Shown piece after piece: positions 30,217 to 57,234 of a stretch of 64,000 nt of DNA. Under the pieces are notes generated by a model, which was not told where the DNA came from, ran no database searches, and worked only from the letters and a program-made list of their open reading frames with translations. Every line of letters begins with the position of its first letter. Within the stretch, counting starts at the first letter, position 1. Both the position numbers and the translations under genes were made by a program. The stretch lies in IMG/VR virus record IMGVR_UViG_3300028393_000019, positions 1 through 64,000 of that record; one strand, given 5' to 3'.

Positions 30217-30227
30217 TAGAGGCATAT

Positions 30228-31091: not shown

Positions 31092-31101
31092 AAGGTAAAT
31101 T

Positions 31102-35782: not shown

Positions 35783-36576
35783 GAGAATTCAAAGTTTGCT
35801 ATCCTGATGCCAACAACATCAATAAAGTTCTTAAACTCAAACCCATTAAGGACTTCAATGTCAAGTATGTAAAACTTGACAAGGAAATCGGGTATTGGGT
35901 GTCGGATCACCCGTTTATTGACAACGGTTTTGATATCTTTAGAGAATTAATAGCTTCATTTCCTATACAGAAAGACAATAATCATCCTGATAATATGGAT
36001 CCCAACCCATTTGATACCATACATGTACCCGAGTGGGTCAGTGGAAATATTGTCTCAGTGGTTGAAGAATTTTATCGCATGAGCAACACAAAAACTATCT
36101 TTGTACCGCAACTGCATGAATGGGGTAATGTTTATTTCAAAGCAAAAGCCCGCCCCATAACCTGCTGGCGAATTCCACATATTGATTATATACATGGCTT
36201 GGTTGCAAATTTATGGTTTACAGATCATGATATTACAGACAGCGGAACCAAATTGTATCACTACACCGGCAAGATGTATAACGAAATTTACGACTTTCAG
36301 CAAGATACTGATCATCCAAGATACAAAGAATGGCAACAGTTGGCTGACAAACCTACTCGCGCAGATGCTTGGTTTAATATTCCCGATGAAGAATTACGAA
36401 CTTGGGGATTTGAATGTGTAGGCATTGCCCCAACCAAAGAAGGCACAATGACCTGGTACAATTCAAATGTTTGCCACCTTGCATATATTTCTGAAAAAGT
36501 AGATTTTAGATGGAGTCATACATTTGCATTTAGCCATGAAACACACCCTAGTACTATGGGAGATTTGTTTAGATGA
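35779..36576 (+). CDS. Fe(II)/2OG oxygenase-like (DUF6445-like)
   Basis: RIPHID (HxD), SGTKLY, distal 'YNSNVCHLA', RWS. Confidence 0.65.
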   Translation: MREFKVCYPDANNINKVLKLKPIKDFNVKYVKLDKEIGYWVSDHPFIDNGFDIFRELIASFPIQKDNNHPDNMDPNPFDTIHVPEWVSGNIVSVVEEFYRMSNTKTIFVPQLHEWGNVYFKAKARPITCWRIPHIDYIHGLVANLWFTDHDITDSGTKLYHYTGKMYNEIYDFQQDTDHPRYKEWQQLADKPTRADAWFNIPDEELRTWGFECVGIAPTKEGTMTWYNSNVCHLAYISEKVDFRWSHTFAFSHETHPSTMGDLFR

Positions 36577-37196
36577 ACTATGATTTATATTTTCCAACTC
36601 CCATATGGTGGGAGGATACCAATTTTGATACCGAAGACATGCTTAAACTATGTTATTCAGTAAAAGAACAAGATCCTATTGGAAGAAAATTAAGCAATGA
36701 CGGTGGCTGGCAAAGCAAAGACTTTAGGCCTGGAAAATACCCCGAGCTAAAAGTCTTAGAAGATAGAATAATGGCGCAGGCACAGCAATGTATACGTGAT
36801 TTTGGATTTGATGAAAATTCATGTTTTCCTGTGTTAGAGAATATATGGCTCAATGTCAACGGCAAGCACAATTCCAACATGGTCCATATGCATGATGCAT
36901 CGTTTGTGTCGGGCGTATTTTACCTAAAGGCTCGCCCCGGGCAGGGTAAAATTACCATGTATAAAAATATGATGCAAGATTTTGCCACAATGTCATTTGC
37001 AAATTTAGAAAAATTTACTCAGATCAGCGCATCTGCAATCAGCTATGATCCATTTACTAGTAGGTTGATCATGTTCCCGGGATGGTTGCCTCACGGAGTA
37101 TCTGCTAACGAGTTAGACGAAGATCGAGTTTCACTTTCATTTAATGTAAAAATAATTAGGACCGACGATGAACGCTATAGGCCAACGATTAGTTAA
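36573..37196 (+). CDS. Fe(II)/2OG oxygenase, TIGR02466-like
   Basis: YFPTPIW, GGWQS, WLNVN..HNSNMVHMH, VSGVFYL, MFPGWLPHGV, RVSLSFN. Confidence 0.88.
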   Translation: MNYDLYFPTPIWWEDTNFDTEDMLKLCYSVKEQDPIGRKLSNDGGWQSKDFRPGKYPELKVLEDRIMAQAQQCIRDFGFDENSCFPVLENIWLNVNGKHNSNMVHMHDASFVSGVFYLKARPGQGKITMYKNMMQDFATMSFANLEKFTQISASAISYDPFTSRLIMFPGWLPHGVSANELDEDRVSLSFNVKIIRTDDERYRPTIS

Positions 37197-37893
37197 CGAG
37201 ACCAATCTTCTATACGAGGATAAACCGCATTATTTTAAAAACTTATTACCAGGTGTAAAAGAAATGCTGACCTGGGCTGATGTTGAAAAATGTGCTAACA
37301 ACCCTGCCCTTTATAATTTTGAAATGATTGGTAAAGATAATATCAAAATTGAAATTCCAATGCATAAAAAAGCATGGGTATTTTCTAAACCAGTGCAGGA
37401 TAAGGCATTTATAGTGGATCATATCAACAAAGGCAACGGTTTTGTCATCATGGACTATGGGTTTTACAGTGAAAAGACCAATGAACTACTAAAAATACTT
37501 GAAACAATCTATGATGTAAATGGTGCTATCCACGTGTATGGCGGACTTGCTGATGCAAAGTCATTCTGGATACACGAGGATTATCCGTCTAACTTTATTT
37601 TTCAAGCAGAAGGTAAAACTAGATGGAAAGTGTACAACAATCGGATTTCTGCCATGTATAGAACTGGCACAATGAATCATAAATTAAAACATCAAGACCT
37701 TGACTTGGCATTCGATGTGGTACTTGAACCAGGTGATGCAATATACATACCATCCAGAGCATACCACATTGCAGAACCAATGGGACAGCGATTGAGTATG
37801 AGTGTTCCGTGTTGGACTAGATTGCCTACAGATGATCCCCGCGAAATGAATGACAGAAACAATTATAGGATTAACTATGACAGAAATATTTAA
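37168..37893 (+). CDS. JmjC/cupin-4 (ROXA/YcfD-like) oxygenase
   Basis: SFWIHED..NFIFQAEGKTRWKVY and LEPGDAIYIPSRAYHIA. Confidence 0.82.
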   Translation: MNAIGQRLVNETNLLYEDKPHYFKNLLPGVKEMLTWADVEKCANNPALYNFEMIGKDNIKIEIPMHKKAWVFSKPVQDKAFIVDHINKGNGFVIMDYGFYSEKTNELLKILETIYDVNGAIHVYGGLADAKSFWIHEDYPSNFIFQAEGKTRWKVYNNRISAMYRTGTMNHKLKHQDLDLAFDVVLEPGDAIYIPSRAYHIAEPMGQRLSMSVPCWTRLPTDDPREMNDRNNYRINYDRNI

Positions 37894-38464
37894 ACCAAGG
37901 GAGTACTCGGGGGGTGTGAATTTTGACTATCAGAAAGCCATGTATGCTTATCTAACTGATATCAAGTTTGACTGGCATTACATGGAAGATACTACCACTG
38001 AAAAAACCAATCTTCCACAATATTCTACCCCAGCATTTGGAAATTTATTATACTATTCACAGCACGAATCAAATCCGCACTACGAATTTTTTAAACCGCT
38101 GATTGAAGCATTGGAACAAACCGCTGGATTTAAAATTAAAAAACTGCTGAGAATGCGAGCTGGTATGTTGCTCAACACCAAATATGTACTGCCAGGTATG
38201 CCTTACAAATATAATACGCCTCACATAGATTATGATATTGATCATTATACAGTAGTGTATTATGTGAACGAGTGTGACGGTGATACTGTGGTATTTCGTG
38301 AAATTGCTCCTGCTGAAAAATACTATAGCCTGCACAAGTGTACCCCACACCAAGGAAAGTTCTTGTTGTTTAACGGGCGGCATTATCATGCAAGTACCTG
38401 TCCCAAAGTGTACACCAAGCGTATTGCTATCACAATCAATTTTACTGCTGATATAGATGGATAA
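37877..38464 (+). CDS. Fe(II)/2OG oxygenase
   Basis: PHIDYD, YYVNECDGDT, FNGRHYHAS, RIAITINF; ATG 37877 has SD AGGA, preferred over 37850. Confidence 0.8.
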   Translation: MTEIFKPREYSGGVNFDYQKAMYAYLTDIKFDWHYMEDTTTEKTNLPQYSTPAFGNLLYYSQHESNPHYEFFKPLIEALEQTAGFKIKKLLRMRAGMLLNTKYVLPGMPYKYNTPHIDYDIDHYTVVYYVNECDGDTVVFREIAPAEKYYSLHKCTPHQGKFLLFNGRHYHASTCPKVYTKRIAITINFTADIDG

Positions 38465-39164
38465 TTTGTTTTTAAATAAATTCATAAACACCAAAAACTT
38501 GAGTAGTTCAGAGTTTATTAAATCTCACGACATTAAAAATCGGTTCCTGTATCCATATATGCCGACCATTGTGATTGATAATTTCTATAACGATCCTAAT
38601 TTATGGAGAGAATTTGCGTTAGATCAAAAGTTTTTCAAAGGTGATCGGGGTAACTGGCCCGGCTTGAGAACTGAATTGTTGCATAAACTACACTATGATC
38701 TATTTAAAATCACGTTGAAAAAAATATTATTTGTTTTAAAAGATTACGGAATTACTCAAGTGGTCGAACTACAAACAGGATTCCAACTGATAGCTGAAGA
38801 GTATGGGCGCGGCTGGGTGCATGATGATGATCCATCGTTTCAATATGCAGGCATCATATATCTAAGCAAGGACGCTCCAATTGGTTCCGGCACTACAATA
38901 TATGAAGACTCTGTGGACTTTGACGGAGATGTATATAACAAAATGTTTGAAACAGATGTTAACAATGCCTCTGCAGAAGATCGAGAAATATATGCAAAAT
39001 ACAGAGCAGAACAAGTGTCAAAATTTAAAAAAAGTATAGTGGTAGAAAATGTATACAATCGCTTTGTATTGTTTGATTCGCGTTGTTGGCACAGTGCTGA
39101 TAATTTTTTTGGTAGCACACCGGACGATACTAGATTAACGCAGGTATTTTTTATCAAACAATGA
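38457..39164 (+). CDS. Fe(II)/2OG oxygenase (DUF6445-like)
   Basis: IVIDNFY.DP, WPGLRT, GWVHDD, AGIIYL, SGTTIY, YNRFVLFDSRCWHSA..FG, RLTQVFF. Confidence 0.78.
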   Translation: MDNLFLNKFINTKNLSSSEFIKSHDIKNRFLYPYMPTIVIDNFYNDPNLWREFALDQKFFKGDRGNWPGLRTELLHKLHYDLFKITLKKILFVLKDYGITQVVELQTGFQLIAEEYGRGWVHDDDPSFQYAGIIYLSKDAPIGSGTTIYEDSVDFDGDVYNKMFETDVNNASAEDREIYAKYRAEQVSKFKKSIVVENVYNRFVLFDSRCWHSADNFFGSTPDDTRLTQVFFIKQ

Positions 39165-39772
39165 AAACATTAAAACAACCAATCAAGGTTATTGATAACT
39201 TTTTTGAAGCTCCTGATTTATGGCAACACTATGCCCTGAAGCAACAGTTTGCTCGAGACAACAACTCAACTTGGCCCGGAACTCGAACTACTACACTGGA
39301 TCAATTGGATATGGAACTGTTTAATTCCGTTGCATCTACTCTCATTAGTCATACACACGGTAAACAGTTCTTTTCTCTCTTAAAGATAAACTTTGCATCT
39401 GTTGACAGCAGTTATAATATTGGATGGATGCACCAAGACGAGCCGCAGTACAATGTTGCTGGCGTCATATTCTTGAATAAATTTGCTCCTGCCAATACTG
39501 GATTATCGTTTTACACAAAGGTTGCAGATAATAATCAAGACTACAACAGTTTGTTCTTTGAAGAATTAAAAGCTGATCCAGCCGATCGATCAGCGTTCGT
39601 TAAATTTAAAGAAGAACAACGTAGATTGTTCAAGCGGAATATGACTGTTGAAAATATTTTTAATAGATGTGTGATGTTTCCACCGGAACAATTCCATGCG
39701 GCTGACGGATACTTTGGCAATACACTAGATGATGCTAGATTAACAATTAATTTTTTTGGAATTTCAATATGA
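39161..39772 (+). CDS. Fe(II)/2OG oxygenase (DUF6445-like), tandem paralogue of 38457
   Basis: VIDNFFEAP, WPGTRT, GWMHQD, AGVIFL, FNRCVMF...FHAA.GYFG, RLTINFF. Confidence 0.78.
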   Translation: MKTLKQPIKVIDNFFEAPDLWQHYALKQQFARDNNSTWPGTRTTTLDQLDMELFNSVASTLISHTHGKQFFSLLKINFASVDSSYNIGWMHQDEPQYNVAGVIFLNKFAPANTGLSFYTKVADNNQDYNSLFFEELKADPADRSAFVKFKEEQRRLFKRNMTVENIFNRCVMFPPEQFHAADGYFGNTLDDARLTINFFGISI

Positions 39773-40383
39773 CATCGGCTTTTGGTCACTTTAGTAATTT
39801 TGGGTTTGTTAGAGATACAGTGCCACCAGAACTGCTCGATGAATTACAAACAGAAATCGATTCAATCGATTTAACAGAACCAATAAAAGATAAACTGGCA
39901 GGCAATTTAGAGACTTCATACGTTCTTGAAAAATCAAGAACTAATTTGGAAAAGTTTGTATTGGGGTTGGCAAACGCATACTCTGCTGGGTTCGATGCAA
40001 CTCAGACTGGTAAAAATCTCACAGGGGATAATTTATCTTTAAGATTGTTTTGGGTAAATTTTCAAAGAAAACACGAGTTCAATCCTATACACATGCACGA
40101 TGGTGATTTCAGCTTTGTGATATGGTTAAAAGTTCCGTATAAACTTGCCGATGAAGTGAATATGCCCCGGGCCAAAAATTCTAATATGCCTCGAGGTGGT
40201 ATGTTTAGTTTTTTCTATACTAATATATTTGGTGAAATTCGAGAAGCTGAATTTCCTATAGACAAGTTATGGGAAGGGCAAATATTGCTATTCCCAGCAT
40301 GTTTACAACACATGGTATATCCATTTGCATCAACGGATGATGTGCGTATATCAATTTCAGGGAACATAAAAAGAAATGAATGA
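39769..40383 (+). CDS. Fe(II)/2OG oxygenase, TIGR02466-like
   Basis: WVNFQRKHEFNPIHMHDGDFSFVIWL, LFPACLQHMVYPF, RISISGN. Confidence 0.82.
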   Translation: MTSAFGHFSNFGFVRDTVPPELLDELQTEIDSIDLTEPIKDKLAGNLETSYVLEKSRTNLEKFVLGLANAYSAGFDATQTGKNLTGDNLSLRLFWVNFQRKHEFNPIHMHDGDFSFVIWLKVPYKLADEVNMPRAKNSNMPRGGMFSFFYTNIFGEIREAEFPIDKLWEGQILLFPACLQHMVYPFASTDDVRISISGNIKRNE

Positions 40384-40984
40384 CATTATAGAAGTTGACA
40401 ATATTATCCCGCTTGATTATCAGAATCATTTACTTGATACATTCACAGGCTGGGAATTTCCATGGGTCCTTAATAAGAATATGGTGTCGGGCGACGAGTG
40501 TTTTAAGAACATGTCAAACAATCCTCCGGGATTTAATCACTTCTTTTACGAAAAAAGTGCGCCAGTGAGTAATTTCTTTCAACTGGTGTACCCGCTAGTA
40601 TTAAGTATAACCAGTCAAGCAAAGGTACCCTTTAACAGACTATACAGAATGCGAGCCAATTTGACACTGGCAAATCAAAAATCGGACTCTGATATGTTGA
40701 TGCCGCACATTGACAGTTTCCACCCGCACTGGAATGCAATTTACTATGTGAATGACAGCGACGGAGATACTATTATTTTTAACGAAACCAATGACGAGTT
40801 TGATCCGGGGCAAAAAGATATAGACAAAATTAAAAATGGTGAATTTACAATCAAACATAGAATTACTCCCAAGAAGGGTAAACTGATTGCGTTCCCAGGC
40901 AAATATTATCATACTGCAAGTTTCTGTAAAGAAGCAGACTATAGATGTTTAATCAATATTAACTTGGGAAATTTATTTGTATGA
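40376..40984 (+). CDS. Fe(II)/2OG oxygenase, paralogue of 37877
   Basis: PHIDS, YYVNDSDGDT, FPGKYYHTAS, RCLININ. Confidence 0.8.
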   Translation: MNDIIEVDNIIPLDYQNHLLDTFTGWEFPWVLNKNMVSGDECFKNMSNNPPGFNHFFYEKSAPVSNFFQLVYPLVLSITSQAKVPFNRLYRMRANLTLANQKSDSDMLMPHIDSFHPHWNAIYYVNDSDGDTIIFNETNDEFDPGQKDIDKIKNGEFTIKHRITPKKGKLIAFPGKYYHTASFCKEADYRCLININLGNLFV

Positions 40985-41523
40985 CAGACTACACACTATA
41001 TCAGTCAGAATTTATTGCCAACAATCAAGATTTAATATTTGAAGATATCAATCGTGCCCACGATTTATTTAGAGAAGTATTTCCTAATCAAGACTCAACT
41101 TGGACTTATCACAAGTATAATATATTTGCGCTAACTGCGCCGTCAACAGCATTTTATCAAATATACACAGAATTGAGAAACTTGGTCAGATCACAGTTGG
41201 GTAACGATAGGCCATTGTGGTTTCAAGCATGGATCAATTACCATCAACAATCCGAATTGTTAAAATGGCACGGGCACGAGTTTGATTATCACGGGTATAT
41301 TGCAATTGACCCCAAGAATACCAAGACAGTATTTGAAGGGTATGAAATTGTAAACAAACCAGGACAGATTTACTTTGGTCCAGGCTGGAGAGAACATATG
41401 GTGGAAGCAATCTCACCATTTCAAGGAGTTAGAACTACAATTGGGTTTGATATATTTACAACTCCGGATAACCGCCATGTAGCCCACCCTTACACCAATA
41501 TGAGTCTAATGCCATTGCTATGA
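40981..41523 (+). CDS. putative Fe(II)/2OG oxygenase
   Basis: AWINY...LKWHGH, HGYI, distal EHMV, RTTIGFD. Confidence 0.65.
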   Translation: MTDYTLYQSEFIANNQDLIFEDINRAHDLFREVFPNQDSTWTYHKYNIFALTAPSTAFYQIYTELRNLVRSQLGNDRPLWFQAWINYHQQSELLKWHGHEFDYHGYIAIDPKNTKTVFEGYEIVNKPGQIYFGPGWREHMVEAISPFQGVRTTIGFDIFTTPDNRHVAHPYTNMSLMPLL

Positions 41524-42158
41524 AACAAGATTACTATATTATCAAAAATGCTATCAGCAAAGAACTGGCTGAATTTATTGCTCTTGAGTTTAGCATGATG
41601 GAAACTACTTGCAAGCATTTGTATCCCGATGCTGATTTGTCAGATTTATGTAAAGGCACATTCGCTCGTTACAGTCCGCTAATGGTAGAAGCATTGTCAG
41701 TATCACTACAGCCCAAGATTGAACAAGCAGTTGGAATGAAATTGTTGCCAACATACTCTTATGCACGTATCTACTACAAAGACACTGATTTAAAATCCCA
41801 TTTTGATCGTGCAAGTTCTGAAGTCACAGTTAGCGTGTGCCTACAACAAACAGCCACATGGCCCTTGTATGTAAAAAATGCCGAAGGAGTAATCCACGCA
41901 ATCAATTTGGAAGTGGGCGATGCTGGAATTTATTGCGGCCGCAAGCACGAACACTGGCGAGAACCTTTACAAGAAGAAGGTCAGCATGTTCAAGCATTTT
42001 TACAATACGTTGACGCTGAAGGTGACGATGCCTGGCTTAAATGGGATACTCGACCCTGTTTAGGGTTACCTTTTGAGTATGCCAGCCAGGCAATACAATC
42101 AGAATTAAGTCACATTAAGAATGTTAAAAACTTAATGGATTCTGTTGGTAAACTGTAA
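41520..42158 (+). CDS. Fe(II)/2OG oxygenase
   Basis: PTYSYARIY...HFDRASSEVTVSVCL, GDAGIYCG..HEHWRE, QAFLQY. Confidence 0.8.
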   Translation: MKQDYYIIKNAISKELAEFIALEFSMMETTCKHLYPDADLSDLCKGTFARYSPLMVEALSVSLQPKIEQAVGMKLLPTYSYARIYYKDTDLKSHFDRASSEVTVSVCLQQTATWPLYVKNAEGVIHAINLEVGDAGIYCGRKHEHWREPLQEEGQHVQAFLQYVDAEGDDAWLKWDTRPCLGLPFEYASQAIQSELSHIKNVKNLMDSVGKL

Positions 42159-47012: not shown

Positions 47013-47603
47013 ATGTCCGAAAAGCAACTATGGCCTTTGTTTTCAAAGCCAATTTTTAAAACACACTTAGACGTTTCTAAAGTGGACTTGTCTAATATCA
47101 AATGGGCAAGGAACTATCAAAACTGGATTAGCGAATCTCAAAAAGTGCTTGACGATCCTGTATTAACTGACTTTGCCAATCAGATTTCAGATAACCTTGT
47201 GGAATACTTTTACGGAATCATGGGTGCAAATCCAAATGTAAAGATGTATGTTACTGAAAGTTGGTTTAACAAAACAGAAAAAGGACAAAGTCATCATAGA
47301 CATTGGCATCCTAACAGTATCTTATCAGGTGTAGTTTATCTTGACAGCGAAGGCGACAGCGGCCGCATTAAATTTATTACCAGCCAGTATGACACAATTG
47401 AATACAATATTGTTGAGTCTAACTTGTATAATTCACGTAGTTGGTCAGTAGTTCCGGAAGCTGGTACTATGCTAATATTCCCCAGTAATGTAGAGCACAT
47501 GGTTGAAGAGTACATTGGCGACAAACCGCGATTTAGTCTGTCGTTTAACACATTTATCAGCGGTGACATCAACGTAGATCCGTTGACTCGACTTAAAATT
47601 TAA
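47013..47603 (+). CDS. Fe(II)/2OG oxygenase, TIGR02466-like
   Basis: LFSKPI, SWFN...SHHRHWHPNSILSGVVYL, LIFPSNVEHMV, RFSLSFN; SD AAAGGA. Confidence 0.88.
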   Translation: MSEKQLWPLFSKPIFKTHLDVSKVDLSNIKWARNYQNWISESQKVLDDPVLTDFANQISDNLVEYFYGIMGANPNVKMYVTESWFNKTEKGQSHHRHWHPNSILSGVVYLDSEGDSGRIKFITSQYDTIEYNIVESNLYNSRSWSVVPEAGTMLIFPSNVEHMVEEYIGDKPRFSLSFNTFISGDINVDPLTRLKI

Positions 47604-48430: not shown

Positions 48431-48879
48431 TAGATTAACTCCACTAGATCGAAGACAGTTTGTAATTTTGTGCGAATAGTTTTGCTTGAAAAACTATTAC
48501 GGAGTCCTTGATGCAAAGGTTTTGGAGAACGATCCATTGTAGCCCATGCCCAACCTTGATGTTCATCACTTAGCACAGGTACAAATTCTGCGTCAACTAC
48601 ACACAGGTAAGTGTGAAAGTTGAATACACGATCGTTTGATACAAATGTTTCTAGCGGAATAGTTTTTATTATGCTGGGGTGACTACCAATTTCTTCGGTA
48701 ATTTCACGCTGTAGACCCTGCCAAGGCGTTTCGCCTGTGACATTGGTACCGCCCACTAGGCCCCAAGTACCTTCATGCTTACCTGTAGCTTTTTGTAGCA
48801 GTAGAAAACGTCTCGTAGATTTGGCATAAAACAATGCTCCGCTACAGACTATTTGTTCTTTTACAATATGATTTTCCAT
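48430..48879 (-). CDS. NUDIX hydrolase
   Basis: Nudix box GGTNVTGETPWQGLQREITEEIG; LSDEHQGWAW. Confidence 0.88.
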   Translation of the reverse strand: MENHIVKEQIVCSGALFYAKSTRRFLLLQKATGKHEGTWGLVGGTNVTGETPWQGLQREITEEIGSHPSIIKTIPLETFVSNDRVFNFHTYLCVVDAEFVPVLSDEHQGWAWATMDRSPKPLHQGLRNSFSSKTIRTKLQTVFDLVELI

Positions 48880-50327
48880 TGTGCGGCAGTATATTCACCC
48901 TCGAAACTCTTGACCCATGAAACACCGTTCCATAAGTATTGAACTCCTGTGTATATATTAGTTTGCCACACCATGGTATCGTGTTCTTGATTGCTGTTGA
49001 AAATAACACGCCATACAGTTCCTGTATATTCTATAATGTCATTGGCTTGAGCCACCAACGACCCCCACACAGACGACGGACTGGTATTGATACTACTGCC
49101 AATATCTTCAATCACAAGATATCGTCTTCCTGCCACAGCGCCAGTGGGCACATAGGTTTGTGGATTGATAATAGCATCAAATGTGCCAGGGCTATTGGGC
49201 CTACGACTGGCAGCGGCGTTGTAGTGTGCAGTATCTGTGCTGAGATACCCGTTGCTGTCAATACCCGTGTTGCTGGGATAAGTGTCTGGATTGTAATTGA
49301 TCTGCAATAATTTTGTATCCAAACTGTTGACTGCAATAGTTCCTATCACATAGTTTCCGCTGGACTGCTGTAGGAATATTTGACTAGAACCTGCGGTATA
49401 TTGTCCAGGATACAATTGGAACAGTTGTGCCCAATCTACAGGACTACCAGTGCTTGCAGGAATATCCAGAGTGGGTGCTAGGGGCACATATCCATCTGTA
49501 CCACTGTACAATCTGGCCTGTCCGTTGTACACTTGAATGGTGTAGCCTGTGATAGTGGTAGTTTCTGTAGCCAGCAGTTGACCCAAGCTGGGTGCCACTC
49601 CGTCTGTTTGTAATGTAGGATCGATGCCCAGTCCGTCTATATAGCCTGCAGGATATGCACCTGATCCCTGATGTATGTTGGTGATAATTTTTGTAATAAC
49701 ACCAAGATGTTTGACTTTGACTGGCGGACTGATCCATATAGGCGATTCTAAAGTCAAGCTAGCAACATCTATGGCTGTGTCAGCGCCCTGGGGAACCTGT
49801 CTGCTGGACCATGTAGTATCAGTTAGATTTAACACACTGATACTGGTCCAGTCAATGTAGTTATCTGTGGTTTGTATTTCAAGACTGGGATTGAACAGCA
49901 CCAGTATCTGTTCCAGTATTTGCAGTTTCTGATCAGTGCTTGATGCCCAGATGTCGCATTTCATTTTTAGATTAAATGGAGTTGGCATCAAACGTTCCAC
50001 TGTGTAGTTACGTCCCTGTGCTGAAGTGTATTCGCCTGCACTGTTTACATCACGTTCACGAAAATGCAATTTGCCCACATAGGTTTGATCAGCCAGTCTG
50101 TTACGATCCAGTTCTAAACCTGTGATATACACTGCTATACGGGGTATAGTACTGATGGAGTTTTCTGAATTATTGTTCAATATACTGGCAACTTGTCGGT
50201 CAGCATCACCGTAAGTTACAGGCACTTGATGCAGTGTGCCATCACCATATTTGACCACAAAGTTACTGAACACACGAATTGTCTGTGTGAGATATCGTCT
50301 TATCTGCCCGTCATAGAACCATTGCAT
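48861..50327 (-). CDS. gp15: tail completion / sheath stabiliser protein, T4 gp15-like with C-terminal extension
   Basis: 'FYDGQIRRYL.Q..RVFSNF...VPVTYG...PRI...PTPFNL...QILEQILVLFNPS' pattern; position next to neck genes. Confidence 0.7.
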   Translation of the reverse strand: MQWFYDGQIRRYLTQTIRVFSNFVVKYGDGTLHQVPVTYGDADRQVASILNNNSENSISTIPRIAVYITGLELDRNRLADQTYVGKLHFRERDVNSAGEYTSAQGRNYTVERLMPTPFNLKMKCDIWASSTDQKLQILEQILVLFNPSLEIQTTDNYIDWTSISVLNLTDTTWSSRQVPQGADTAIDVASLTLESPIWISPPVKVKHLGVITKIITNIHQGSGAYPAGYIDGLGIDPTLQTDGVAPSLGQLLATETTTITGYTIQVYNGQARLYSGTDGYVPLAPTLDIPASTGSPVDWAQLFQLYPGQYTAGSSQIFLQQSSGNYVIGTIAVNSLDTKLLQINYNPDTYPSNTGIDSNGYLSTDTAHYNAAASRRPNSPGTFDAIINPQTYVPTGAVAGRRYLVIEDIGSSINTSPSSVWGSLVAQANDIIEYTGTVWRVIFNSNQEHDTMVWQTNIYTGVQYLWNGVSWVKSFEGEYTAAQWKIIL

Positions 50328-51784
50328 TAGAAATCCGCCTTAGGTCTGAGTGCAGTAGATAGACTTGATCTTTCTGCTTCTCTTGTGTTATATAGTGTGA
50401 TGCTCCACTGTCCTGTACTAGGTATGACTTGCTGTATGCCATTGATCGTGGGCAAGTTGATTCGTAAACAAGCACTGGTAGTGCCAACTGGGCTGATATA
50501 GTTATATGAAGTGTACAGGGTTGTTGGATAATCGCTCAGTGCAAATCCCAGTGTGGTAACGCCTATTTTGATCACAGCATACTTGGCCACGCTGCCTGTC
50601 GCAAAAGTTATTCTAGTGTTGATAAATGTAGCATTTGCAACCAAGTTGACCACATCGGTAGCCACTTCGCTGTTGTAAGTGTAGTTGTTGTTGTTGATAA
50701 AACTGGTCTTGAGGGTACTGCGCGAGTCAGTCTGTGTCATGTCCATACGCACTGCATCCTCTACTTTGATCCAACTGTTGCCTTCAAATCTAAATAGTCT
50801 GTTGGGTAAAAAATCTGTTCTAAGATAAAAATCATTCTCACCGGGATATTCTGGAAACTGTATACCAAATCCAAAGGCATAGCCGTTGTCTGGAATTCCG
50901 TCGCCTATCAAATAGCCAGTGTAACCTGTGCGAACAGGAACTCCGGCATTTTCGTTTGCAAGATAATTTATCTGACTGGTATCCAGTGTTGACTCGTCGG
51001 CTGTCTGAACCACCGGCTTGCCTGTTGCAGGATCTACAGCCAATGTATAAAATTGTCTTGTTTCGTAACCGCTTTTTGGTGCATCTGCTTGACCTTGTGC
51101 CACCACTTGGTCGCCCACATTTACTATGGTATTGTAGTTGCTCAGTAGCTCGGCCAAGGTGGTGTTGGAACCAACTATAGGATCACCGTTGCTGTCAGCA
51201 ATGGGTGCATTGAATATAGATGTAAACTGTTGTTGATTGGCCACCTTCTTGAGTTTTAATCTGTAGAGATGCGGAGCCCAGGTTACTGAAAATCCTTCAC
51301 TTGCACGACCCACATCAGTAACTTGATAGTATCTGGGCAAACTGACATTGTAATTGTTTAGGGCAAAATCATCTCGTAGATGTGGCAGTTCTAATACATC
51401 ACCAGTAATGGGCTTGCGCCCTATAATTTTTTGTATGTCATTGATGTGTACAGTCATGTAGACTGTGTCATTTTCAATGAAAAGTCCAAACTGACTAACA
51501 TTAAAGTCAATGTTTTGAACTTGATATAGCCCACGAATTCTATAGATTTCTTTATCGTAGGTGCGATCTCGGTTTTCTAAAAACAGCAGATCTTGTATGT
51601 TGGTCACGCTGGTATTGGCATAGTTGGGCTGTGCCGCAGTGGCATTTTCAGCTGATGTATTGGCACCTAGATATTTGTGCCAATACACATCAGTTCCGCC
51701 CACAGTGAACATCTCTGAGGCTTGTCGGTCAATGAACTTGTAGTCCTTGCCTTTTTCTGGTTTGTATAGGGATAAGCGTGGCAT
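50327..51784 (-). CDS. gp14: neck/head-closure protein, T4 gp14-like, extended
   Basis: 'DLLFLENRDR.YD...SQFGLFIENDT.YMT.H...GRKP..GDVLELP' pattern. Confidence 0.65.
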   Translation of the reverse strand: MPRLSLYKPEKGKDYKFIDRQASEMFTVGGTDVYWHKYLGANTSAENATAAQPNYANTSVTNIQDLLFLENRDRTYDKEIYRIRGLYQVQNIDFNVSQFGLFIENDTVYMTVHINDIQKIIGRKPITGDVLELPHLRDDFALNNYNVSLPRYYQVTDVGRASEGFSVTWAPHLYRLKLKKVANQQQFTSIFNAPIADSNGDPIVGSNTTLAELLSNYNTIVNVGDQVVAQGQADAPKSGYETRQFYTLAVDPATGKPVVQTADESTLDTSQINYLANENAGVPVRTGYTGYLIGDGIPDNGYAFGFGIQFPEYPGENDFYLRTDFLPNRLFRFEGNSWIKVEDAVRMDMTQTDSRSTLKTSFINNNNYTYNSEVATDVVNLVANATFINTRITFATGSVAKYAVIKIGVTTLGFALSDYPTTLYTSYNYISPVGTTSACLRINLPTINGIQQVIPSTGQWSITLYNTREAERSSLSTALRPKADF

Positions 51785-51791
51785 AGTAACA

Positions 51792-51811
51792 TATTTATCG
51801 ATAGCTAAATA
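51792..51811. promoter_or_regulatory. back-to-back divergent late promoters
   Basis: TATTTA (51792-51797, minus) and TAAATA (51806-51811, plus) between the divergent gp14-like and gp13-like genes. Confidence 0.7.
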
Positions 51812-51829
51812 TAGTACGAGGACAATTAT

Positions 51830-52618
51830 ATGGCAGATTCACTACCGTCAAGCACCCAAAGTACATCAACTGTAGAGCGTAACAAAGTATTTGAGTACGT
51901 CAAACTCATGCTGGGCGATGGTATGGTTGAAGTAGAACTTGATCCCGTTCACTATGAGATGGCTCTAGATCGTGCCCTAAATAGAATGCGTCAGCGCAGT
52001 CCCAACGCTGTAGAAGAAAGCTACATGTTTTTAGAACTAATACAGGACGAAAATGAATACAGATTACCTGATGAAGTTATCACAGTACGTCAAGTGTTTC
52101 GTAGAGCTATTGGCTCAAGAACTGGTATTGGTGCAGGCGGCACGCTATTTGAGCCGTTTAATCTAGCATATACCAATACCTATTTGATGAGTGGAAGTAT
52201 GATGGGCGGATTGGCCACATACGATGCATTTGCTGGCTATCAGAAACTAGTGGGGCGTATGTTTGGTAGTTATATAGAATTCCTTTGGAAGCCTACCACA
52301 CACATTTTGAACATTTTACAACGTCCTTTTGCACAGGGCGAACAGATTCTAGTGCAGACCTATAACTATCGCCCTGACTGGGTATTGTTACAAGATCCGT
52401 ACGCCAAACAATGGATACGTGATTACACTTTGGCCACTAGTAAAGAAATGCTGGGCGAGGCACGTAGCAAGTTTGGATCAATATCGGGTCCTAGCAGTCC
52501 TGTAACATTGAACGGAACTGCACTAAAAAGCGAAGCCAAAGAGATGATTGAAAAATTGGACAAGGAATTAGAAATGCTAGTTCCCGGCGGTTCGGGCTAT
52601 TATTTCGTAATAGGTTAA
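51830..52618 (+). CDS. gp13: neck protein, T4 gp13-like
   Basis: 'YVKLMLGDGMVEVELD', 'WIRDYTLA..KEMLGEARSKF..I.GP...VTLNGTALK.EA'. Confidence 0.75.
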   Translation: MADSLPSSTQSTSTVERNKVFEYVKLMLGDGMVEVELDPVHYEMALDRALNRMRQRSPNAVEESYMFLELIQDENEYRLPDEVITVRQVFRRAIGSRTGIGAGGTLFEPFNLAYTNTYLMSGSMMGGLATYDAFAGYQKLVGRMFGSYIEFLWKPTTHILNILQRPFAQGEQILVQTYNYRPDWVLLQDPYAKQWIRDYTLATSKEMLGEARSKFGSISGPSSPVTLNGTALKSEAKEMIEKLDKELEMLVPGGSGYYFVIG

Positions 52619-52626: not shown

Positions 52627-52656
52627 TTGACCCCTGTAATAAAAGTGTTATATACT
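52627..52656 (+). promoter_or_regulatory. sigma70-type (early/middle) promoter for dNMP kinase
   Basis: TTGACC-18 nt-TATACT. Confidence 0.6.
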
Positions 52657-52679
52657 AGCACTACTTACAGGGGATTCTT

Positions 52680-53369
52680 ATGATCATAGGTGTGTGCGGT
52701 TTTATTGGCTCGGGCAAAGATACTATTGCAGATTATCTAACTAACTTTCACGGGTTTAGACGAGAATCATTTGCCAACAGTCTTAAGGATGCTGTGAGCG
52801 CAGTGTTTGGTTGGGACAGAACCATGCTGGAAGGCCGCACAAAACAGGCCCGTGAATGGCGAGAACAAGTGGATCCTTGGTGGGCCGAAAGACTGGGCAT
52901 GCCACATTTGACTCCGCGTTGGATCTTGCAATACTGGGGTACAGAAGTTTGCCGTCAGGGATTCCACGATGACATGTGGATTGCGGCACTGGAAAACAAA
53001 CTGCGCACAAGTACAGACAATATTGTTATTAGTGATTGCCGATTCCCTAACGAAATCAAATCAATCAAAAGTGCAGGTGGACAAATTGTGTGTGTCGAAC
53101 GCGGTATTCAACCACATTGGTTGGACATTGCTGTACAGGCAAATCGAGGCAGTGCCAATGCACAAGACTGGTTAAAAACTGAAATGATCCACGCAAGTGA
53201 AACTGCTTGGGTTGGTACTAGTTTTGATGCTGTGCTCAATAACAATGGCACTATTGACGATCTTTATCAACAGGTCAAACTGCTTATAGATCCGGAACTA
53301 GATCACCTTGACGCCAACGAACGCCCTCTTTATGTAGGACTCTCTGACAGTTTGCACATACAGTCTTGA
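52680..53369 (+). CDS. gp1: deoxynucleoside monophosphate kinase, T4 gp1-like
   Basis: IIGVCGFIGSGKDT P-loop, SFANSLKD, TPRWILQYWGTE, ISDCRFPNE, HASE. Confidence 0.9.
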   Translation: MIIGVCGFIGSGKDTIADYLTNFHGFRRESFANSLKDAVSAVFGWDRTMLEGRTKQAREWREQVDPWWAERLGMPHLTPRWILQYWGTEVCRQGFHDDMWIAALENKLRTSTDNIVISDCRFPNEIKSIKSAGGQIVCVERGIQPHWLDIAVQANRGSANAQDWLKTEMIHASETAWVGTSFDAVLNNNGTIDDLYQQVKLLIDPELDHLDANERPLYVGLSDSLHIQS

Positions 53370-53610
53370 GATTTGCATGATGGCAATTGTCTAAATTGCC
53401 ATCAACATGAAACACAGCAAACACTTCTTTGTGCTGTGACTTAAACCCGCATTTATCGCAACTGAGTTTTACTTTGTATCCAGCACGAAGCCATCGTGCT
53501 GTTCCTTTGCCACCAAGGCAAGTTTCACACTTACGTCTGTAGTAAGTACGTCCGTTTTTGTGATAATTAACAGCGGCTGGCCTTAGGCCGCACATACACA
53601 GTGGTCTCAT
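53284..53610 (-). CDS. small Cys-rich HNH-like zinc-binding protein
   Basis: CxC, CxxC, CDKCG, FHVDGNLDN...NLKTVCANC; own TAAATA 5 nt upstream. Confidence 0.7.
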   Translation of the reverse strand: MRPLCMCGLRPAAVNYHKNGRTYYRRKCETCLGGKGTARWLRAGYKVKLSCDKCGFKSQHKEVFAVFHVDGNLDNCHHANLKTVCANCQRVLHKEGVRWRQGDLVPDL

Positions 53611-53615: not shown

Positions 53616-53683
53616 TATTTAAGCCTTTTTATCCCCTTTTTGTGGTAGTATAACTGCACCAAAAAGTCCAAATGCCATAAATA
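53616..53683. promoter_or_regulatory. divergent late promoters (minus 53616-53621; plus 53678-53683)
   Basis: TAAATA on each strand facing the HNH-like gene and the tail sheath gene. Confidence 0.6.
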
Positions 53684-53715: not shown

Positions 53716-56700
53716 ATGGCTCAATTAAGTTCACCAGGAATTAGCGTAACGGTTGTAAATGAATCGTTCTATACACCCGCTGCCCCAGGTACCATACCCC
53801 TAATCGTAGTAGCTTCACAAGCAAACAAAGCAAATTCAGCTGGCACAGGAATTGCCCCGGGCACGTTGGCTGCCAACGCTGGTGTAGTATATACACTGAC
53901 CAGCCAAGCAGACCTAGGTGCCACATTTGGTGTACCTTACTTTCAAACAGACGCCAGCAACAATCCAGTAAATGCAGGTGAGATCAATGAATACGGTCTA
54001 CAAGCTGCCTACAGTTTCTTGGGTGTTAGCAATCAAGCCTATGTGGTACGTGCTCCAGTTGACCTCGGACAACTGACAGGATCAACCAGCATACCAGTAG
54101 GTTCGCCAACAGCCGGTACATATTGGTGGAACACAACTGCCACAAACTATGGTGTATTTGAATGGAATGCCAATGCGGCAACTGCAACAAACGGACAAAC
54201 ATTTCAAGAACAGCAGTCAATAGGCAATCTGTTAGTTATTACCAACACAGCATACCTAAGTCCGTCAACAGGGTTTGATGGGTTAGATGTGTATGATAGC
54301 CCATTGGCCAGCTACGGAGCTTCAGGTAACTATGCCGTGGTTGCAAATTCATCAGCAACCAACACACATATTCTATGGTACAAAACAAAAAATACAGCAA
54401 ACGACGGTACAGGTGGCTCAACTATTGCTGTCAGCAACAGTAGTTGGGTACAAGTTGGTACAACTGCTTGGGCCAAATCACAGCCAACTATCACTTCAAC
54501 TGCACCAAGTCCAACATTTACTGCCAGTCAAACAATAATAATCAATGCCAACACAATCACCAATGCTGGCACAACGCTGGCAGGTTTGTCCACAGCGATC
54601 AACGCCAGCTCAGCATTGACCTCAGCAGGTATCACATCTAGTGTGCGCAACGGTTTCCTAAATATCTATTCAACCGGTGCTCAGGTTACTATCGCAGCCG
54701 GCACAATGTCGTTGACCACACTGGGTATTACAGCTGGTACATATAATCCACCAGTGTTGGTTATTGCACCGCATTATCAAGTTCCACAATTCGGCAATTA
54801 TTCATCAGGCACACTGACCGGCACTACAGGATTCCCGTCAGGTTCAGTATGGATCAAAACAACTACAGTCAATCTAGGCGCCAACTTCAATATCAGTTTG
54901 TACAATGGTACAACTGCCAGCTGGATACAACAAACTTCAGTTACACAGTTGTATGCCAACAATCAGTCAGCGATGGCTGCATTGGATCCATTAGGTGGCG
55001 GTGCAAACATACCAGTGGGACAAGTTTATGTCAAGTTTAACGATACAGAATCACTCACAACAATCAACAGCATCAACTATCCAACCTACGCCAACTATAA
55101 AATTTACTATCGTGCGTCAACAGGTGCTACAACTGTAACATCTAATATCATCACAGCAAGTACATTTACTAGCGGTTCGAACACAATCGTAGCTGTGGCA
55201 TCTAGTCAGATAGGCAGTTCTACACTAACATCAGCACCACAAGTGAGTGGTGCGGCAGTTACATTTACTGCTTCGGGCAACGCTACATCAGATGCACAGG
55301 CATTTGTGGCCGCGTTCAATGCCGCTGTACAAACATTGACCAACGTGGTAGCCAGCATTAATGCAAACAATCAGATTGTTATATCTCATACACAGGGTGG
55401 TGACATACGCTTTACTGATGGTACTAACACTCCGCTAAACAAGGCCTTTACCACAAGTGGCACTATCAGTATCAGCAATTTCTTTGCCGCTCCTGATTCA
55501 ACAGGCAGCGACGGCAAGTATTTGGTATCAGCATGGGCCAATACACTGTCAATCTCTAGTAATACTCCTTGGGTAACAGTGAGCCCAACAGCACCTACAT
55601 CAACTCCTGCCAACGGTACCCTATGGTATGACACAGTGATCACTGATTTAGACATCATGATCAATGATGGCACACGCTGGAGAGGCTACTGCTCAACTGC
55701 AGGAAAAGTTGTTGTCAACCAAGGTGTTGGCTATGCAAACAGTGCCACAACTACAGACATCAATGGTCCTATTATTTCTGCTACGCAACCAACCACTAAC
55801 TCATCAGGTGCAAGTTTACAGCACGGTGATTTATGGTTAAATTCAAGCAATACAGAAGCTTGGCCAACGCTGTACACATGGAATGCATTGACCAAAGCAT
55901 GGGTACTGATTGTCAACAGCGATCATACTACACAAAATGGTATTGTGTTTGCTGATGCTCGCTGGTATGATGACAGCACCAACTCGGCCAGCGCAAAAAC
56001 AGGCGCAGCCAGTCCACAAACTATTGCAGGCGCCGCAACTGGCACACTGATTACTAGTGACTTTGTAGATTTTGACTGTCCTAATCCAGCACTGTATCCA
56101 AAAGGTATGTTGTTGTGGAACACACGTCGTTCAGGATTCAACGTTAAGAAGTATGTTACTAATTATGTTAATGTGGCCGCTCAAAACACAATCCTAAGTG
56201 GTTCTCCTTACATGACTTATTACTATCCAGATCGTTGGGTAACAGCAAGTCCTAATGATTATTTAGGTGTAGGACAGTTTGGCCGTAAGAGTCAACGTGC
56301 AGTGGTGGTAGCATCATTGAACGGATTGATCAACAGCAATCAAAACATGCGTAACGAAGACAGTCTCACTTACGATTTACTATGTTGCCCAGGATATATT
56401 GAAACAACCAGTTCTTTGGTTAATTTAAACACAGGACGCGGTCTACTATCATTTATCGTAGCAGATGCTCCGGCACGTTTGACACCAGATGCAACAAGCC
56501 TAAGTGCTTGGGGCAGTAACTCAAAGAATGCCACAGGTGACGGTGAAATTGGTCTGATTACAACTGACAGTAATACAGCAGTTTACTATCCATGGGGTGA
56601 AACCACTGACTTGTACGGCAACAATATTGCTGTACCTCCAAGCCATATCATGCTACGCACAATCGCACTAAGCGACAACGTGAGTTATCCATGGTTTGCA

Positions 56701-57234
56701 CCAGCAGGTGTACGTCGCGGTGGAGTTACCAATGCAAACTCAGTTGGTTACATTGTTGGACAAACAGGTGTGTTTATGCCAACATCACTAAACACAGGAC
56801 AACGCGATACGCTGGCCAAAGTACAGGTTAATCCTATTACCTATATTGGTGGCACAGGTCTAGTTGTATATGGGCAGTTTACACGTTCGTTAGTTGCCAG
56901 TGCAGTGAATCGTATCAATGTGGCACGTTTGGTAATTTATCTACGCTACCAGTTGAATGCTATTGCTAAACCATATGTATTTGAACCAAACGATACAATT
57001 ACACGTAACTCAATCAAACAACAAATTGAAAAATTAATGCTGAATCTCACAGGAGAACGAGCCTTGTACGATTACTTGATAGTATGCGATACAACTAACA
57101 ATACTCCGAGCAGAATAGATGCTAATGAGTTACACGTTGATATAGCTATTGAGCCAGTCAAGGCAGTGGAATTTATTTACATTCCATTACGTTTAGAGAA
57201 CACTGGCGCTATTGCTGGTTTAGGTAGCAAATAA
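53716..57234 (+). CDS. gp18: contractile tail sheath protein with large internal insertion
   Basis: LSSPGISVTVVNES N-terminus; PPSH...PWFAPAGVRRG, RDTL...VNPI, RINVARL, FEPND, IEPVKAVEFIYIP C-terminus; 1172 aa. Confidence 0.92.
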   Translation: MAQLSSPGISVTVVNESFYTPAAPGTIPLIVVASQANKANSAGTGIAPGTLAANAGVVYTLTSQADLGATFGVPYFQTDASNNPVNAGEINEYGLQAAYSFLGVSNQAYVVRAPVDLGQLTGSTSIPVGSPTAGTYWWNTTATNYGVFEWNANAATATNGQTFQEQQSIGNLLVITNTAYLSPSTGFDGLDVYDSPLASYGASGNYAVVANSSATNTHILWYKTKNTANDGTGGSTIAVSNSSWVQVGTTAWAKSQPTITSTAPSPTFTASQTIIINANTITNAGTTLAGLSTAINASSALTSAGITSSVRNGFLNIYSTGAQVTIAAGTMSLTTLGITAGTYNPPVLVIAPHYQVPQFGNYSSGTLTGTTGFPSGSVWIKTTTVNLGANFNISLYNGTTASWIQQTSVTQLYANNQSAMAALDPLGGGANIPVGQVYVKFNDTESLTTINSINYPTYANYKIYYRASTGATTVTSNIITASTFTSGSNTIVAVASSQIGSSTLTSAPQVSGAAVTFTASGNATSDAQAFVAAFNAAVQTLTNVVASINANNQIVISHTQGGDIRFTDGTNTPLNKAFTTSGTISISNFFAAPDSTGSDGKYLVSAWANTLSISSNTPWVTVSPTAPTSTPANGTLWYDTVITDLDIMINDGTRWRGYCSTAGKVVVNQGVGYANSATTTDINGPIISATQPTTNSSGASLQHGDLWLNSSNTEAWPTLYTWNALTKAWVLIVNSDHTTQNGIVFADARWYDDSTNSASAKTGAASPQTIAGAATGTLITSDFVDFDCPNPALYPKGMLLWNTRRSGFNVKKYVTNYVNVAAQNTILSGSPYMTYYYPDRWVTASPNDYLGVGQFGRKSQRAVVVASLNGLINSNQNMRNEDSLTYDLLCCPGYIETTSSLVNLNTGRGLLSFIVADAPARLTPDATSLSAWGSNSKNATGDGEIGLITTDSNTAVYYPWGETTDLYGNNIAVPPSHIMLRTIALSDNVSYPWFAPAGVRRGGVTNANSVGYIVGQTGVFMPTSLNTGQRDTLAKVQVNPITYIGGTGLVVYGQFTRSLVASAVNRINVARLVIYLRYQLNAIAKPYVFEPNDTITRNSIKQQIEKLMLNLTGERALYDYLIVCDTTNNTPSRIDANELHVDIAIEPVKAVEFIYIPLRLENTGAIAGLGSK

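What the first reader, a model, noticed from the sequence alone, without database searches (positions are those of the whole stretch)
52627..52682. Hairpin enclosing a sigma70 promoter and hiding the dNMP-kinase ribosome-binding site: inverse of the T4 late-gene switch
Seen: CCCCTGTAA (52631-52639) pairs with TTACAGGGG (52665-52673), with an inner stem AGTGTTA/TAGCACT. The 3' arm contains the SD (AGGGGA) and the -10 box lies in the loop. Known: T4 silences genes such as e and soc on early read-through RNA using SD-sequestering hairpins that are absent from the late transcript. Inference: here late read-through from the gp13 promoter would fold and block translation, while the short sigma70 transcript starting near 52663 lacks the 5' arm and is translated.
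Basis: partly seen in the sequence, partly recalled or inferred. Interest (0 to 1): 0.6.

Follow-up and report, generated by a model that had tools for sequence, protein, structure and literature searches.

The report
Promoter-in-hairpin gate on phage kinase gene
In an uncultured T4-like phage, an RNA hairpin encloses an early-type promoter and covers the ribosome-binding site of a nucleotide kinase gene, so the gene is probably translated from its own short transcript but not from late read-through RNA; relatives keep this logic through compensating mutations, but nobody has measured it.

Summary
The outer stem is 9 perfect pairs (52631-39 with 52665-73). The inner stem is 7 pairs, and the -10 box lies in the apical loop. 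The 3' arm holds the Shine-Dalgarno sequence.

On its own the hairpin is only modestly above chance: fold z is -2.3 to -2.75, and 16 of 300 shuffles of the upstream part hide the ribosome site as well.

The stronger evidence is comparative. [quoted passage not shown] Two interchangeable designs do this.
- The window's design, where the -35/spacer region pairs with the SD, occurs in 14 regions.
- A shorter stem, where the bases after the -10 box pair with the bases before AUG, occurs in 62. It covaries strongly.

The gene upstream is a co-directional neck gene (gp14-like, not gp13). It has a conserved T4-type late promoter motif, and no terminator lies between the two genes.

The best reading is translation gated by transcript start site, as in T4 genes e, soc, 49 and I-TevI but with the promoter classes swapped. 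No transcript or translation data could be obtained.

The parts
51805..51811 (+). Late-promoter-like motif CTAAATA upstream of the gp14-like gene. It is the presumed source of the long read-through RNA. A divergent partner motif lies at 51791-51798 and is read on the minus strand.
   Evidence: The motif (C/A)TAAATAT lies about 5 nt before the SD in most of the 62 distinct gp14-upstream regions of relatives. nTAAATA occurs within -50..-8 of 24 of 172 genes, against 1.6% of random stretches.
51830..52618 (+). gp14-like neck / head-tail adaptor gene (262 aa), co-directional with the kinase gene. Its stop codon is at 52616-52618.
   Evidence: PHROG phrog_211 head-tail adaptor Ad2, E 5e-29. ORF list.
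52627..52632 (+). -35 hexamer TTGACC.
   Evidence: It matches the genome's own set of strong TTGACA-N17-TATAAT promoters. It is conserved in 82 of 87 distinct upstream regions of relatives.
52631..52639 (+). 5' arm of the outer stem (CCCCTGTAA). It overlaps the last two bases of the -35 hexamer and the spacer, and ends more than 20 nt upstream of the predicted start (24 nt by the coordinates; one search printed 22 with its flanking base).
52644..52662 (+). Inner stem-loop: AGTGTTA, loop TATAC, TAGCACT.
52651..52656 (+). -10 hexamer TATACT. The last T is invariant in all 82 relatives that have a promoter.
52663..52663 (+). Predicted sigma70 transcription start, the 7th base after the -10 hexamer, +/-1. 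This is inferred, not mapped.
   Evidence: Rule from E. coli-type promoters (general knowledge) applied.
52665..52673 (+). 3' arm of the outer stem (TTACAGGGG). It contains the Shine-Dalgarno AGGGG (52669-52673).
52680..53369 (+). Deoxynucleoside monophosphate kinase gene (229 aa).
   Evidence: PHROG phrog_139, E 1e-49. Pfam DNMK PF21448, E 1.5e-11.
53676..53683 (+). Late-promoter-like motif CATAAATA before the tail sheath gene (53716-57234). It shows that the next late gene has its own promoter.
   Evidence: Sheath identified.

Best explanation
This is a translation gate set by where the transcript starts.

Late in infection, RNA started at the T4-type late promoter of the gp14-like gene runs through the 61-nt intergenic region into the kinase gene. 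On this long RNA the sequence next to the -35 box pairs with the Shine-Dalgarno sequence, and the ribosome site is closed. Early in infection, host sigma70 polymerase starts at about 52663, inside the hairpin. The resulting short RNA has a 17-nt leader, lacks the 5' arm, has an open ribosome site and is translated.

Shown here: the structure, the promoter match, the absence of a canonical terminator, and the conservation and covariation in relatives.
Inferred: the start site, the existence of the read-through RNA, and the effect on translation.
For: Structure and placement:
- establish the hairpin and its position.
- The short RNA from 52663 has no significant structure (z 0.27) and a free SD.
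- Opening energy of -12..+3 is 9.4 kcal/mol on the long RNA and 2.2 on the short one. P(unpaired SD) is 0.16 against 0.66.
- Among 26 sigma70 promoter-gene pairs in this 265,680-bp genome, this one has the largest long-minus-short difference: 7.1, against a median of 0.47.

Promoter:
- It is the only strong sigma70-type promoter inside the structural block. Dozens of such promoters lie in the early regions.

Read-through:
- The stop codon lies 8 nt before the -35 box.
- No terminator-like site was found between the genes. The genome's real terminators carry T-runs.
- A late motif upstream of gp14 is conserved in relatives.

Relatives:
- Across 83 distinct upstream regions, mean opening energy is 8.1 for the long RNA and 3.6 for the short one. 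It is 5.8 with the upstream part shuffled and 5.7 with upstream parts swapped between loci. In 87% of loci the observed value exceeds the shuffle mean.
- 76 of 83 regions pair the ribosome site with sequence upstream of the predicted start: 14 in the window's way and 62 by a short stem.
- On all 82 regions, the short stem is 83% paired against 74% when shuffled. It has 77 double-change cells against 21 +/- 11 (0 of 500 shuffles). Slid controls give 29-54%. Searches agree.
- G-U pairs far outnumber A-C cells, so the pairing is on the sense-strand RNA.
- The window-type stems differ by compensated changes, for example CCCCGTAA with TTACGGGG and TCTCCTAG with CTAGGAGA. All their 5' arms end 15-23 nt before the predicted start.
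- The two designs are interspersed on the kinase tree.
- The cassette stays directly before the kinase gene even when other genes are inserted upstream.
- The leader is 100% identical to L022, while the flanks are 65-85% identical.
Against: - No 5' ends, RNA abundance or translation data exist.
- The window's hairpin alone is near the edge of chance: 16 of 300 shuffles, and 9-bp inverted repeats are common.
- The window-register structure is not conserved across the family: 59.8% paired against 58.2% shuffled.
- RNAalifold predicts no consensus structure on either alignment. The short stem is thermodynamically weak, with 6 pairs and an 11-14-nt loop.
- The intergenic region is so compact that any hairpin there must overlap both the promoter and the ribosome site.
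- The related sequences are not independent, so shuffle counts overstate significance.
- The host and its polymerase are unknown.
Confidence: 0.6

Rival explanations
1. The hairpin is a weak or unusual intrinsic terminator or pause site. It ends the late gp14 transcript, and the kinase promoter happens to sit in its loop. The kinase gene is insulated at the level of transcription, and hiding the SD is incidental.
For: - The base of the stem is four G-C pairs, followed by a tail with 5 U in 8 bases.
- Window-type relatives all have a U-rich spacer after the 3' arm.
- At the second locus, several relatives have U-tracts after the stem.
Against: - The terminator scan did not call it, and the tail has no U-run. 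The genome's clear terminators have small loops and runs of 4-7 T.
- The family-wide short stem is AU-rich at its base with an 11-14-nt loop, which is unlike a terminator. Yet it alternates with the window type among close relatives.
- The U-rich tail is largely fixed by the start codon and the Ile-Ile codons.
Confidence: 0.15
2. The hairpin is an RNA processing or stability element. It could be a 3'-end protective hairpin for gp14 mRNA, or an RNase III-type site with two stems around an internal loop, as in T7 early RNA.
For: - The two-tier shape, with a 9-bp lower stem, a 4+2-nt internal loop and a 7-bp upper stem, resembles T7 RNase III sites. This resemblance is from general knowledge and was not tested.
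- It lies directly after a late structural gene.
Against: - The short stem used by most relatives has only 6 pairs, too short for RNase III.
- In every variant the 3' arm falls on the SD or the AUG rather than anywhere else in the spacer.
Confidence: 0.1
3. The inverted repeat acts on DNA as an operator for a dimeric regulator that brackets the promoter. Alternatively, the conserved spacer binds a protein and the RNA fold is a by-product.
For: - The promoter spacer is unusually conserved among relatives and contains a direct repeat, TGTAATA then TGTTATA.
- Other promoters in the genome do not share this spacer.
Against: - The arm sequences change while pairing is kept, including through G-U pairs that only make sense in sense-strand RNA.
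- A protein site would keep its sequence, not its complementarity.
Confidence: 0.07
4. The window's 9-bp repeat is a chance palindrome with no function. Only the promoter and the ribosome site matter.
For: - About 10 such repeats are expected per 64 kb.
- 16 of 300 shuffles do as well.
- RNAalifold finds nothing.
Against: - It ranks first of 26 promoters in the genome.
- Independent window-type stems with compensated changes occur in relatives.
- There is a family-wide excess of pairing between promoter sequence and the ribosome site.
Confidence: 0.08

Closest known systems
T4 genes e (lysozyme), soc, 49 and I-TevI, and mobE of phage Aeh1: hairpins that hide the ribosome site, with an internal promoter (review PMC3014915, section 29)
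   Same: - The SD and/or AUG sits in a helix on the long read-through RNA.
- A promoter lies in the DNA that encodes the 5' strand or the loop, so its transcript lacks the 5' arm and is translated.
- The hairpin is conserved in related phages.
   Different: - In those cases the internal promoter is a late one (TATAAATA) and early or middle read-through RNA is silenced.
- Here the internal promoter is sigma70-type, and the silenced RNA would be late read-through from a structural gene.
- The regulated gene is a nucleotide-metabolism enzyme rather than a lysis, capsid or nuclease gene.
- Nothing has been measured here.
PeSL elements (promoter-early stem-loops) of T4-like phages (PMC4122927, PMC2839356)
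   Same: A compact intergenic cassette with a sigma70-like early promoter, an SD, a start codon and a stem-loop, found in a T4-like genome.
   Different: - In PeSLs the stem-loop lies just upstream of the promoter and acts as a terminator. The elements are repeated many times in hyperplastic regions.
- Here the stem encloses the promoter and its 3' arm is the SD.
- The sequence is single-copy in the window, and no other promoter in the genome shares its spacer.
Intrinsic (Rho-independent) terminators
   Same: G-C pairs at the base of a hairpin, followed by a U-rich stretch.
   Different: - There is no U-run, and the hairpin is long and two-tiered with a 25-nt enclosed segment.
- The scan did not call it.
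- The commoner family variant has a large loop and an AU-rich stem.

Membership tests
T4-type start-site-gated translation (e, soc, 49, I-TevI, mobE) | The SD and/or start codon is held in an RNA helix on the long transcript. | tested here: met
   - The SD lies in the 9-bp outer stem.
- P(unpaired SD) is 0.16 on the long RNA.
T4-type start-site-gated translation (e, soc, 49, I-TevI, mobE) | A promoter lies inside the hairpin, so that its transcript lacks the 5' arm. | tested here: inconclusive
   - By position this is met. The -10 box is at 52651-56, the predicted start is about 52663, and the 5' arm is at 52631-39.
- The start site is not mapped.
T4-type start-site-gated translation (e, soc, 49, I-TevI, mobE) | Transcription from an upstream promoter of another temporal class reads through the hairpin. 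| tested here: inconclusive
   - The gp14-like gene is co-directional, has a conserved late motif, and no terminator-like site lies between the genes.
- No RNA data were available.
T4-type start-site-gated translation (e, soc, 49, I-TevI, mobE) | The internal promoter is a late promoter (TATAAATA) and the silenced RNA is early or middle. | tested here: not met
   - The internal promoter is TTGACC-N18-TATACT, which is sigma70-type.
- There is no TAAATA motif in the intergenic region.
- This is why it is filed as a variant, not a member.
T4-type start-site-gated translation (e, soc, 49, I-TevI, mobE) | Translation from the long and short leaders is measured and differs. | not testable with these tools
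   Only predicted opening energies are available: 9.4 against 2.2 kcal/mol.
PeSL | [quoted passage not shown] | tested here: not met
   - The definition comes from PMC4122927, Fig. 3 legend.
- Here the arms flank the promoter.
PeSL | Many similar copies occur in hyperplastic regions of one genome. | tested here: not met
   - The only exact match in the window is the element itself, and near matches are at chance level.
- No other promoter in the genome shares its spacer.
Intrinsic terminator | A compact G+C-rich hairpin with a small loop, followed directly by a U-run. | tested here: not met
   - It is not listed by the scan.
- The tail AUUCUUAU has no run of U.
- Canonical terminators elsewhere in the genome have T-runs.
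Rfam families | A match to any curated covariance model. | tested here: not met
   The only hit is a chance-level snoRNA match elsewhere, E 0.74.

The most novel reading that the evidence does not exclude
A whole family of uncultured, apparently freshwater T4-like phages uses promoter-in-hairpin cassettes as a general way to insulate sigma70-driven genes that sit downstream of other transcription units.
- The same function would be reached by at least two interchangeable stem designs that swap between close relatives.
- The design would be used at more than one locus. A second promoter-enclosing hairpin that pairs with the SD lies at genome position 149,075.
- This would be the temporal mirror image of the classic T4 late-gene switch.
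Probability: 0.45. Interest if true: 0.6.

Novelty: new variant of a known kind. Interest (0 to 1): 0.5.

Why it matters
If true, the T4 trick of making translation depend on which promoter made the RNA also works in the opposite temporal direction. It would switch an early enzyme gene off on late structural-gene transcripts without needing a terminator.

It would explain how a nucleotide-metabolism gene can sit between neck and tail-sheath genes in this phage family.

The comparative data also show how such a gate evolves. The requirement is to pair the ribosome site with something upstream of the start. It is met by different stems in close relatives.

The 55-nt cassette is also a compact natural part for expression that depends on transcript origin.

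Tried and rejected
- PeSL membership: rejected, because the stem encloses the promoter rather than preceding it, and the element is single-copy.
- Rfam: no family matched.
- Megablast against cultured phages: no match. By protein, the nearest cultured phages are below 50% identical, so no annotated or studied relative is available.
- The window's own stem as a family-wide structure: rejected, 59.8% against 58.2% paired.
- RNAalifold on all 82 regions and on the short-stem subset: no consensus structure in either case. I report this as a negative. The named-structure counts and the anchored table still show covariation.
I did not try another route.
- Canonical terminator between the two genes: none found. 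The one weak hit, at 52583-52596, lies inside the gp14-like coding sequence and is not conserved in relatives.
- Literature search for an already described inverse case, where an early gene is silenced on late RNA by such a hairpin: nothing found in the held library. This is not proof of absence.
- The careful tree search did not finish. Only the quick tree was used.

Full report
**Observation**

- The outer stem pairs CCCCTGTAA (52631-52639) with TTACAGGGG (52665-52673), 9 perfect pairs.
- The inner stem pairs AGTGTTA (52644-52650) with TAGCACT (52656-52662), 7 pairs with one G-U.
- The apical loop is TATAC.
- The -35 hexamer TTGACC is at 52627-52632 and the -10 hexamer TATACT at 52651-52656, with an 18-nt spacer.
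- The Shine-Dalgarno AGGGG(A) is at 52669-52674, inside the 3' arm. The start codon is at 52680.

RNAfold gives this hairpin as both MFE and centroid: -21.6 kcal/mol, z -2.33, 4 of 200 shuffles as good. It survives in a 181-nt context with z -2.75.

Taken alone, the repeat is weak evidence. Perfect 9-bp inverted repeats with short loops occur 25 times in the window, against about 10.6 in shuffles. Shuffling only the part upstream of the predicted start closes the ribosome site as well in 16 of 300 trials.

**Context**

The window is the first 64 kb of a single 265,680-bp contig with 42% G+C. The genes around the site are as follows.

| Coordinates | Strand | Gene |
|---|---|---|
| 48861-50327 | - | gp15-like tail sheath stabiliser |
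| 50327-51784 | - | structural protein |
| 51830-52618 | + | gp14-like head-tail adaptor |
| 52680-53369 | + | deoxynucleoside monophosphate kinase |
| 53716-57234 | + | tail sheath |

The co-directional upstream gene is therefore gp14-like, not gp13.

The genome carries dozens of near-consensus TTGACA-N17-TATAAT promoters in two early regions. The kinase promoter is the only strong one inside the structural block, and no other promoter shares its spacer.

T4-type late motifs (nTAAATA) are present:
- They lie within 50 nt of 24 of 172 gene starts, against 1.6% of random stretches.
- One lies before the sheath gene, at 53676-53683.
- One lies before the gp14-like gene, at 51805-51811.
- The gp14 motif, with a divergent partner for the opposite gene, is conserved in most of the 62 distinct gp14-upstream regions of relatives.

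The gp14-like stop codon is 8 nt from the -35 box. No terminator-like site lies between the two genes. The genome's clear terminators have small loops and T-runs. Late RNA from the gp14-like gene should therefore enter the kinase leader. This step is inferred, not observed.

**What the fold would do**

With the start at the 7th base after the -10 box (about 52663, by general sigma70 rules), the short RNA has a 17-nt leader and lacks the 5' arm. It has no significant structure (z 0.27) and a free SD.

| Measure | Long RNA | Short RNA |
|---|---|---|
| Cost of opening -12..+3 (kcal/mol) | 9.4 | 2.2 |
| Probability that the SD is unpaired | 0.16 | 0.66 |

Among 26 sigma70 promoter-gene pairs in this genome, the kinase has the largest long-minus-short difference: 7.1 against a median of 0.47.

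**Relatives**

No cultured phage is close. Megablast finds nothing, and the kinase is below 50% identical to any in cultured phages. IMG/VR holds hundreds of uncultured relatives. I collected 87 distinct kinase upstream regions, and 82 of them have a TTGnnn-N16-18-TAnnnT promoter at the same place.

Two designs appear.

*Type A (the window's design).*
- The bases at and after the end of the -35 box pair with the SD.
- It occurs in 14 distinct regions, with different arm sequences that stay complementary. Examples are CCCCGTAA with TTACGGGG, CCTTGTAA with TTACGAGG, and TCTCCTAG with CTAGGAGA. Several keep pairing through G-U.
- All the 5' arms end 15-23 nt before the predicted start.

*Type B (62 regions).*
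- The last T of the -10 box and the next five bases pair with the five bases before AUG plus the A of AUG.
- The SD sits in an 11-14-nt loop.

The type B stem covaries strongly.

| Measure | All 82 regions | Type B subset |
|---|---|---|
| Cells paired, observed | 83% | 87% |
| Cells paired, shuffled | 74% | 76% |
| Double-change cells, observed | 77 | 42 |
| Double-change cells, shuffled | 21 +/- 11 | 10 +/- 4 |
| Shuffles reaching the observed value | 0 of 500 | 0 of 500 |
| Cells paired, slid controls | 29-54% | 21-62% |

The subset was chosen by predicted pairing, so its pairing percentage is biased upward. An alignment-free table anchored on the -10 box and the AUG agrees. G-U pairs greatly outnumber A-C cells, so the pairing is in the sense-strand RNA.

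In both types the 5' arm lies upstream of the predicted sigma70 start. A structure that covaries there implies that RNA made from further upstream matters.

Register-free measures point the same way.

| Condition | Mean opening energy (kcal/mol) |
|---|---|
| Long RNA | 8.1 |
| Short RNA | 3.6 |
| Upstream part shuffled | 5.8 |
| Upstream parts swapped between loci | 5.7 |

In 87% of loci the observed value exceeds the shuffle mean.

Further points:
- On a quick kinase tree the two types are interspersed. The window's nearest relatives (88% identical) are type B.
- The leader of L022 is 100% identical to the window's, while the flanking coding sequence is 65-85% identical.
- In relatives where two small genes are inserted after gp14, the cassette stays directly before the kinase gene.

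**Weaknesses**

- The window-register structure is not conserved family-wide: 59.8% against 58.2% paired.
- RNAalifold returns no consensus structure for either alignment.
- The type B stem is short and weak.
- The sequences are related to one another, so shuffle counts overstate significance.
- The intergenic region is so compact that any hairpin must touch both the promoter and the ribosome site.
- The start site, the read-through RNA and any effect on translation are all unmeasured.

**Mechanism and rivals**

Best explanation (confidence about 0.6): translation is gated by the transcript's start site. The kinase is made from its own early sigma70 transcript and is silent on late read-through RNA.

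Rivals:
- A weak terminator (0.15). In favour are the G-C base and the U-rich but interrupted tail. Against are the scan and the un-terminator-like type B stem that replaces type A in close relatives.
- A processing or stability hairpin (0.1).
- A DNA operator or protein site (0.07). The conserved spacer with its direct repeat remains unexplained. However, complementarity rather than sequence is what the arms conserve.
- Chance (0.08).

The terminator and translational readings are not exclusive. An untranslated read-through RNA would also be exposed to Rho, which is speculation.

**Comparison with known systems**

The working principle is that of T4 e, soc, 49 and I-TevI, and of Aeh1 mobE. 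In those, a promoter in the DNA encoding the 5' strand of a hairpin that hides the ribosome site yields a translatable short RNA (PMC3014915). The defining detail that the internal promoter is late and the silenced RNA is early or middle is not met here. The classes are swapped, so I file this as a new variant rather than a member.

It is not a PeSL. In PeSLs the stem-loop precedes the promoter and the elements are multi-copy (PMC4122927).

No Rfam family matches. A search of the held literature found no description of the inverse arrangement, which does not prove that none exists.

**Verdict**

It is a new variant of a known kind, of moderate interest (0.5).

Noticed in passing
Outside the window: genome position about 149,075-149,145 (L200:1576-1645): A second promoter-enclosing hairpin in the same genome.
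- TCCAAAAGT, just after a TTGACA -35 box, pairs with ACTTTTGGA, which contains the SD. TTGAC also pairs with GTCAA.
- It folds at -21.9 kcal/mol with z -2.26.
- It ranks second of 26 promoters for the long-minus-short opening energy (6.9).
- The gene is of unknown function (phrog_27048) and is followed by an endolysin-like gene.
- 13 of 48 distinct relatives keep a strong version with compensated changes, and some have a U-tract after the stem.

   Followed up: partly
window 52633-52650, and alignment A1 columns 18-34: The promoter spacer is unusually conserved among relatives and contains a direct repeat, TGTAATA then TGTTATA. This holds even in relatives whose stem does not use the spacer. 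Other sigma70 promoters of the genome have unrelated spacers. A protein site or a small extra hairpin are both possible, and the conservation is unexplained.
   Followed up: partly
window 53284-53610, minus strand: A 108-aa ORF with weak HNH endonuclease matches (E 4e-5) lies between the kinase and sheath genes on the opposite strand. It overlaps the last 86 nt of the kinase gene. It may be a mobile endonuclease gene, and late read-through RNA would be antisense to it.
   Followed up: no
window 51791-51812: Back-to-back divergent late-promoter-like motifs lie in the 45-nt gap between the minus-strand structural gene (start at 51784) and the gp14-like gene. They are ATAAATAT read on the minus strand and CTAAATAT on the plus strand. 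The arrangement is conserved in most relatives.
   Followed up: partly
window 52590-52599 with about 52704-52714: In the 181-nt fold, the 3' end of the gp14-like coding sequence pairs with kinase codons 8-12 (10 pairs, 4 of them G-U), enclosing the whole intergenic region. Both stretches encode Gly-Ser-Gly. The upstream stretch is not conserved in relatives, so this is probably chance.
   Followed up: no
window 8307-28235: Two very large adjacent ORFs of 2925 aa and 3701 aa lie in the structural block.
   Followed up: no
window 28585-31956 and 35177-42158: There are two runs of similar-sized, tightly packed ORFs: four of 255-287 aa, then eleven of 180-265 aa. The ends of the first set look alike in the upstream-region printout, which suggests tandem paralogues.
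   Followed up: no
window 47013-47603, plus strand: A 2OG-Fe(II) oxygenase gene (Pfam PF13759, E 2e-21) is embedded among neck and tail genes on the opposite strand to its neighbours.
   Followed up: no
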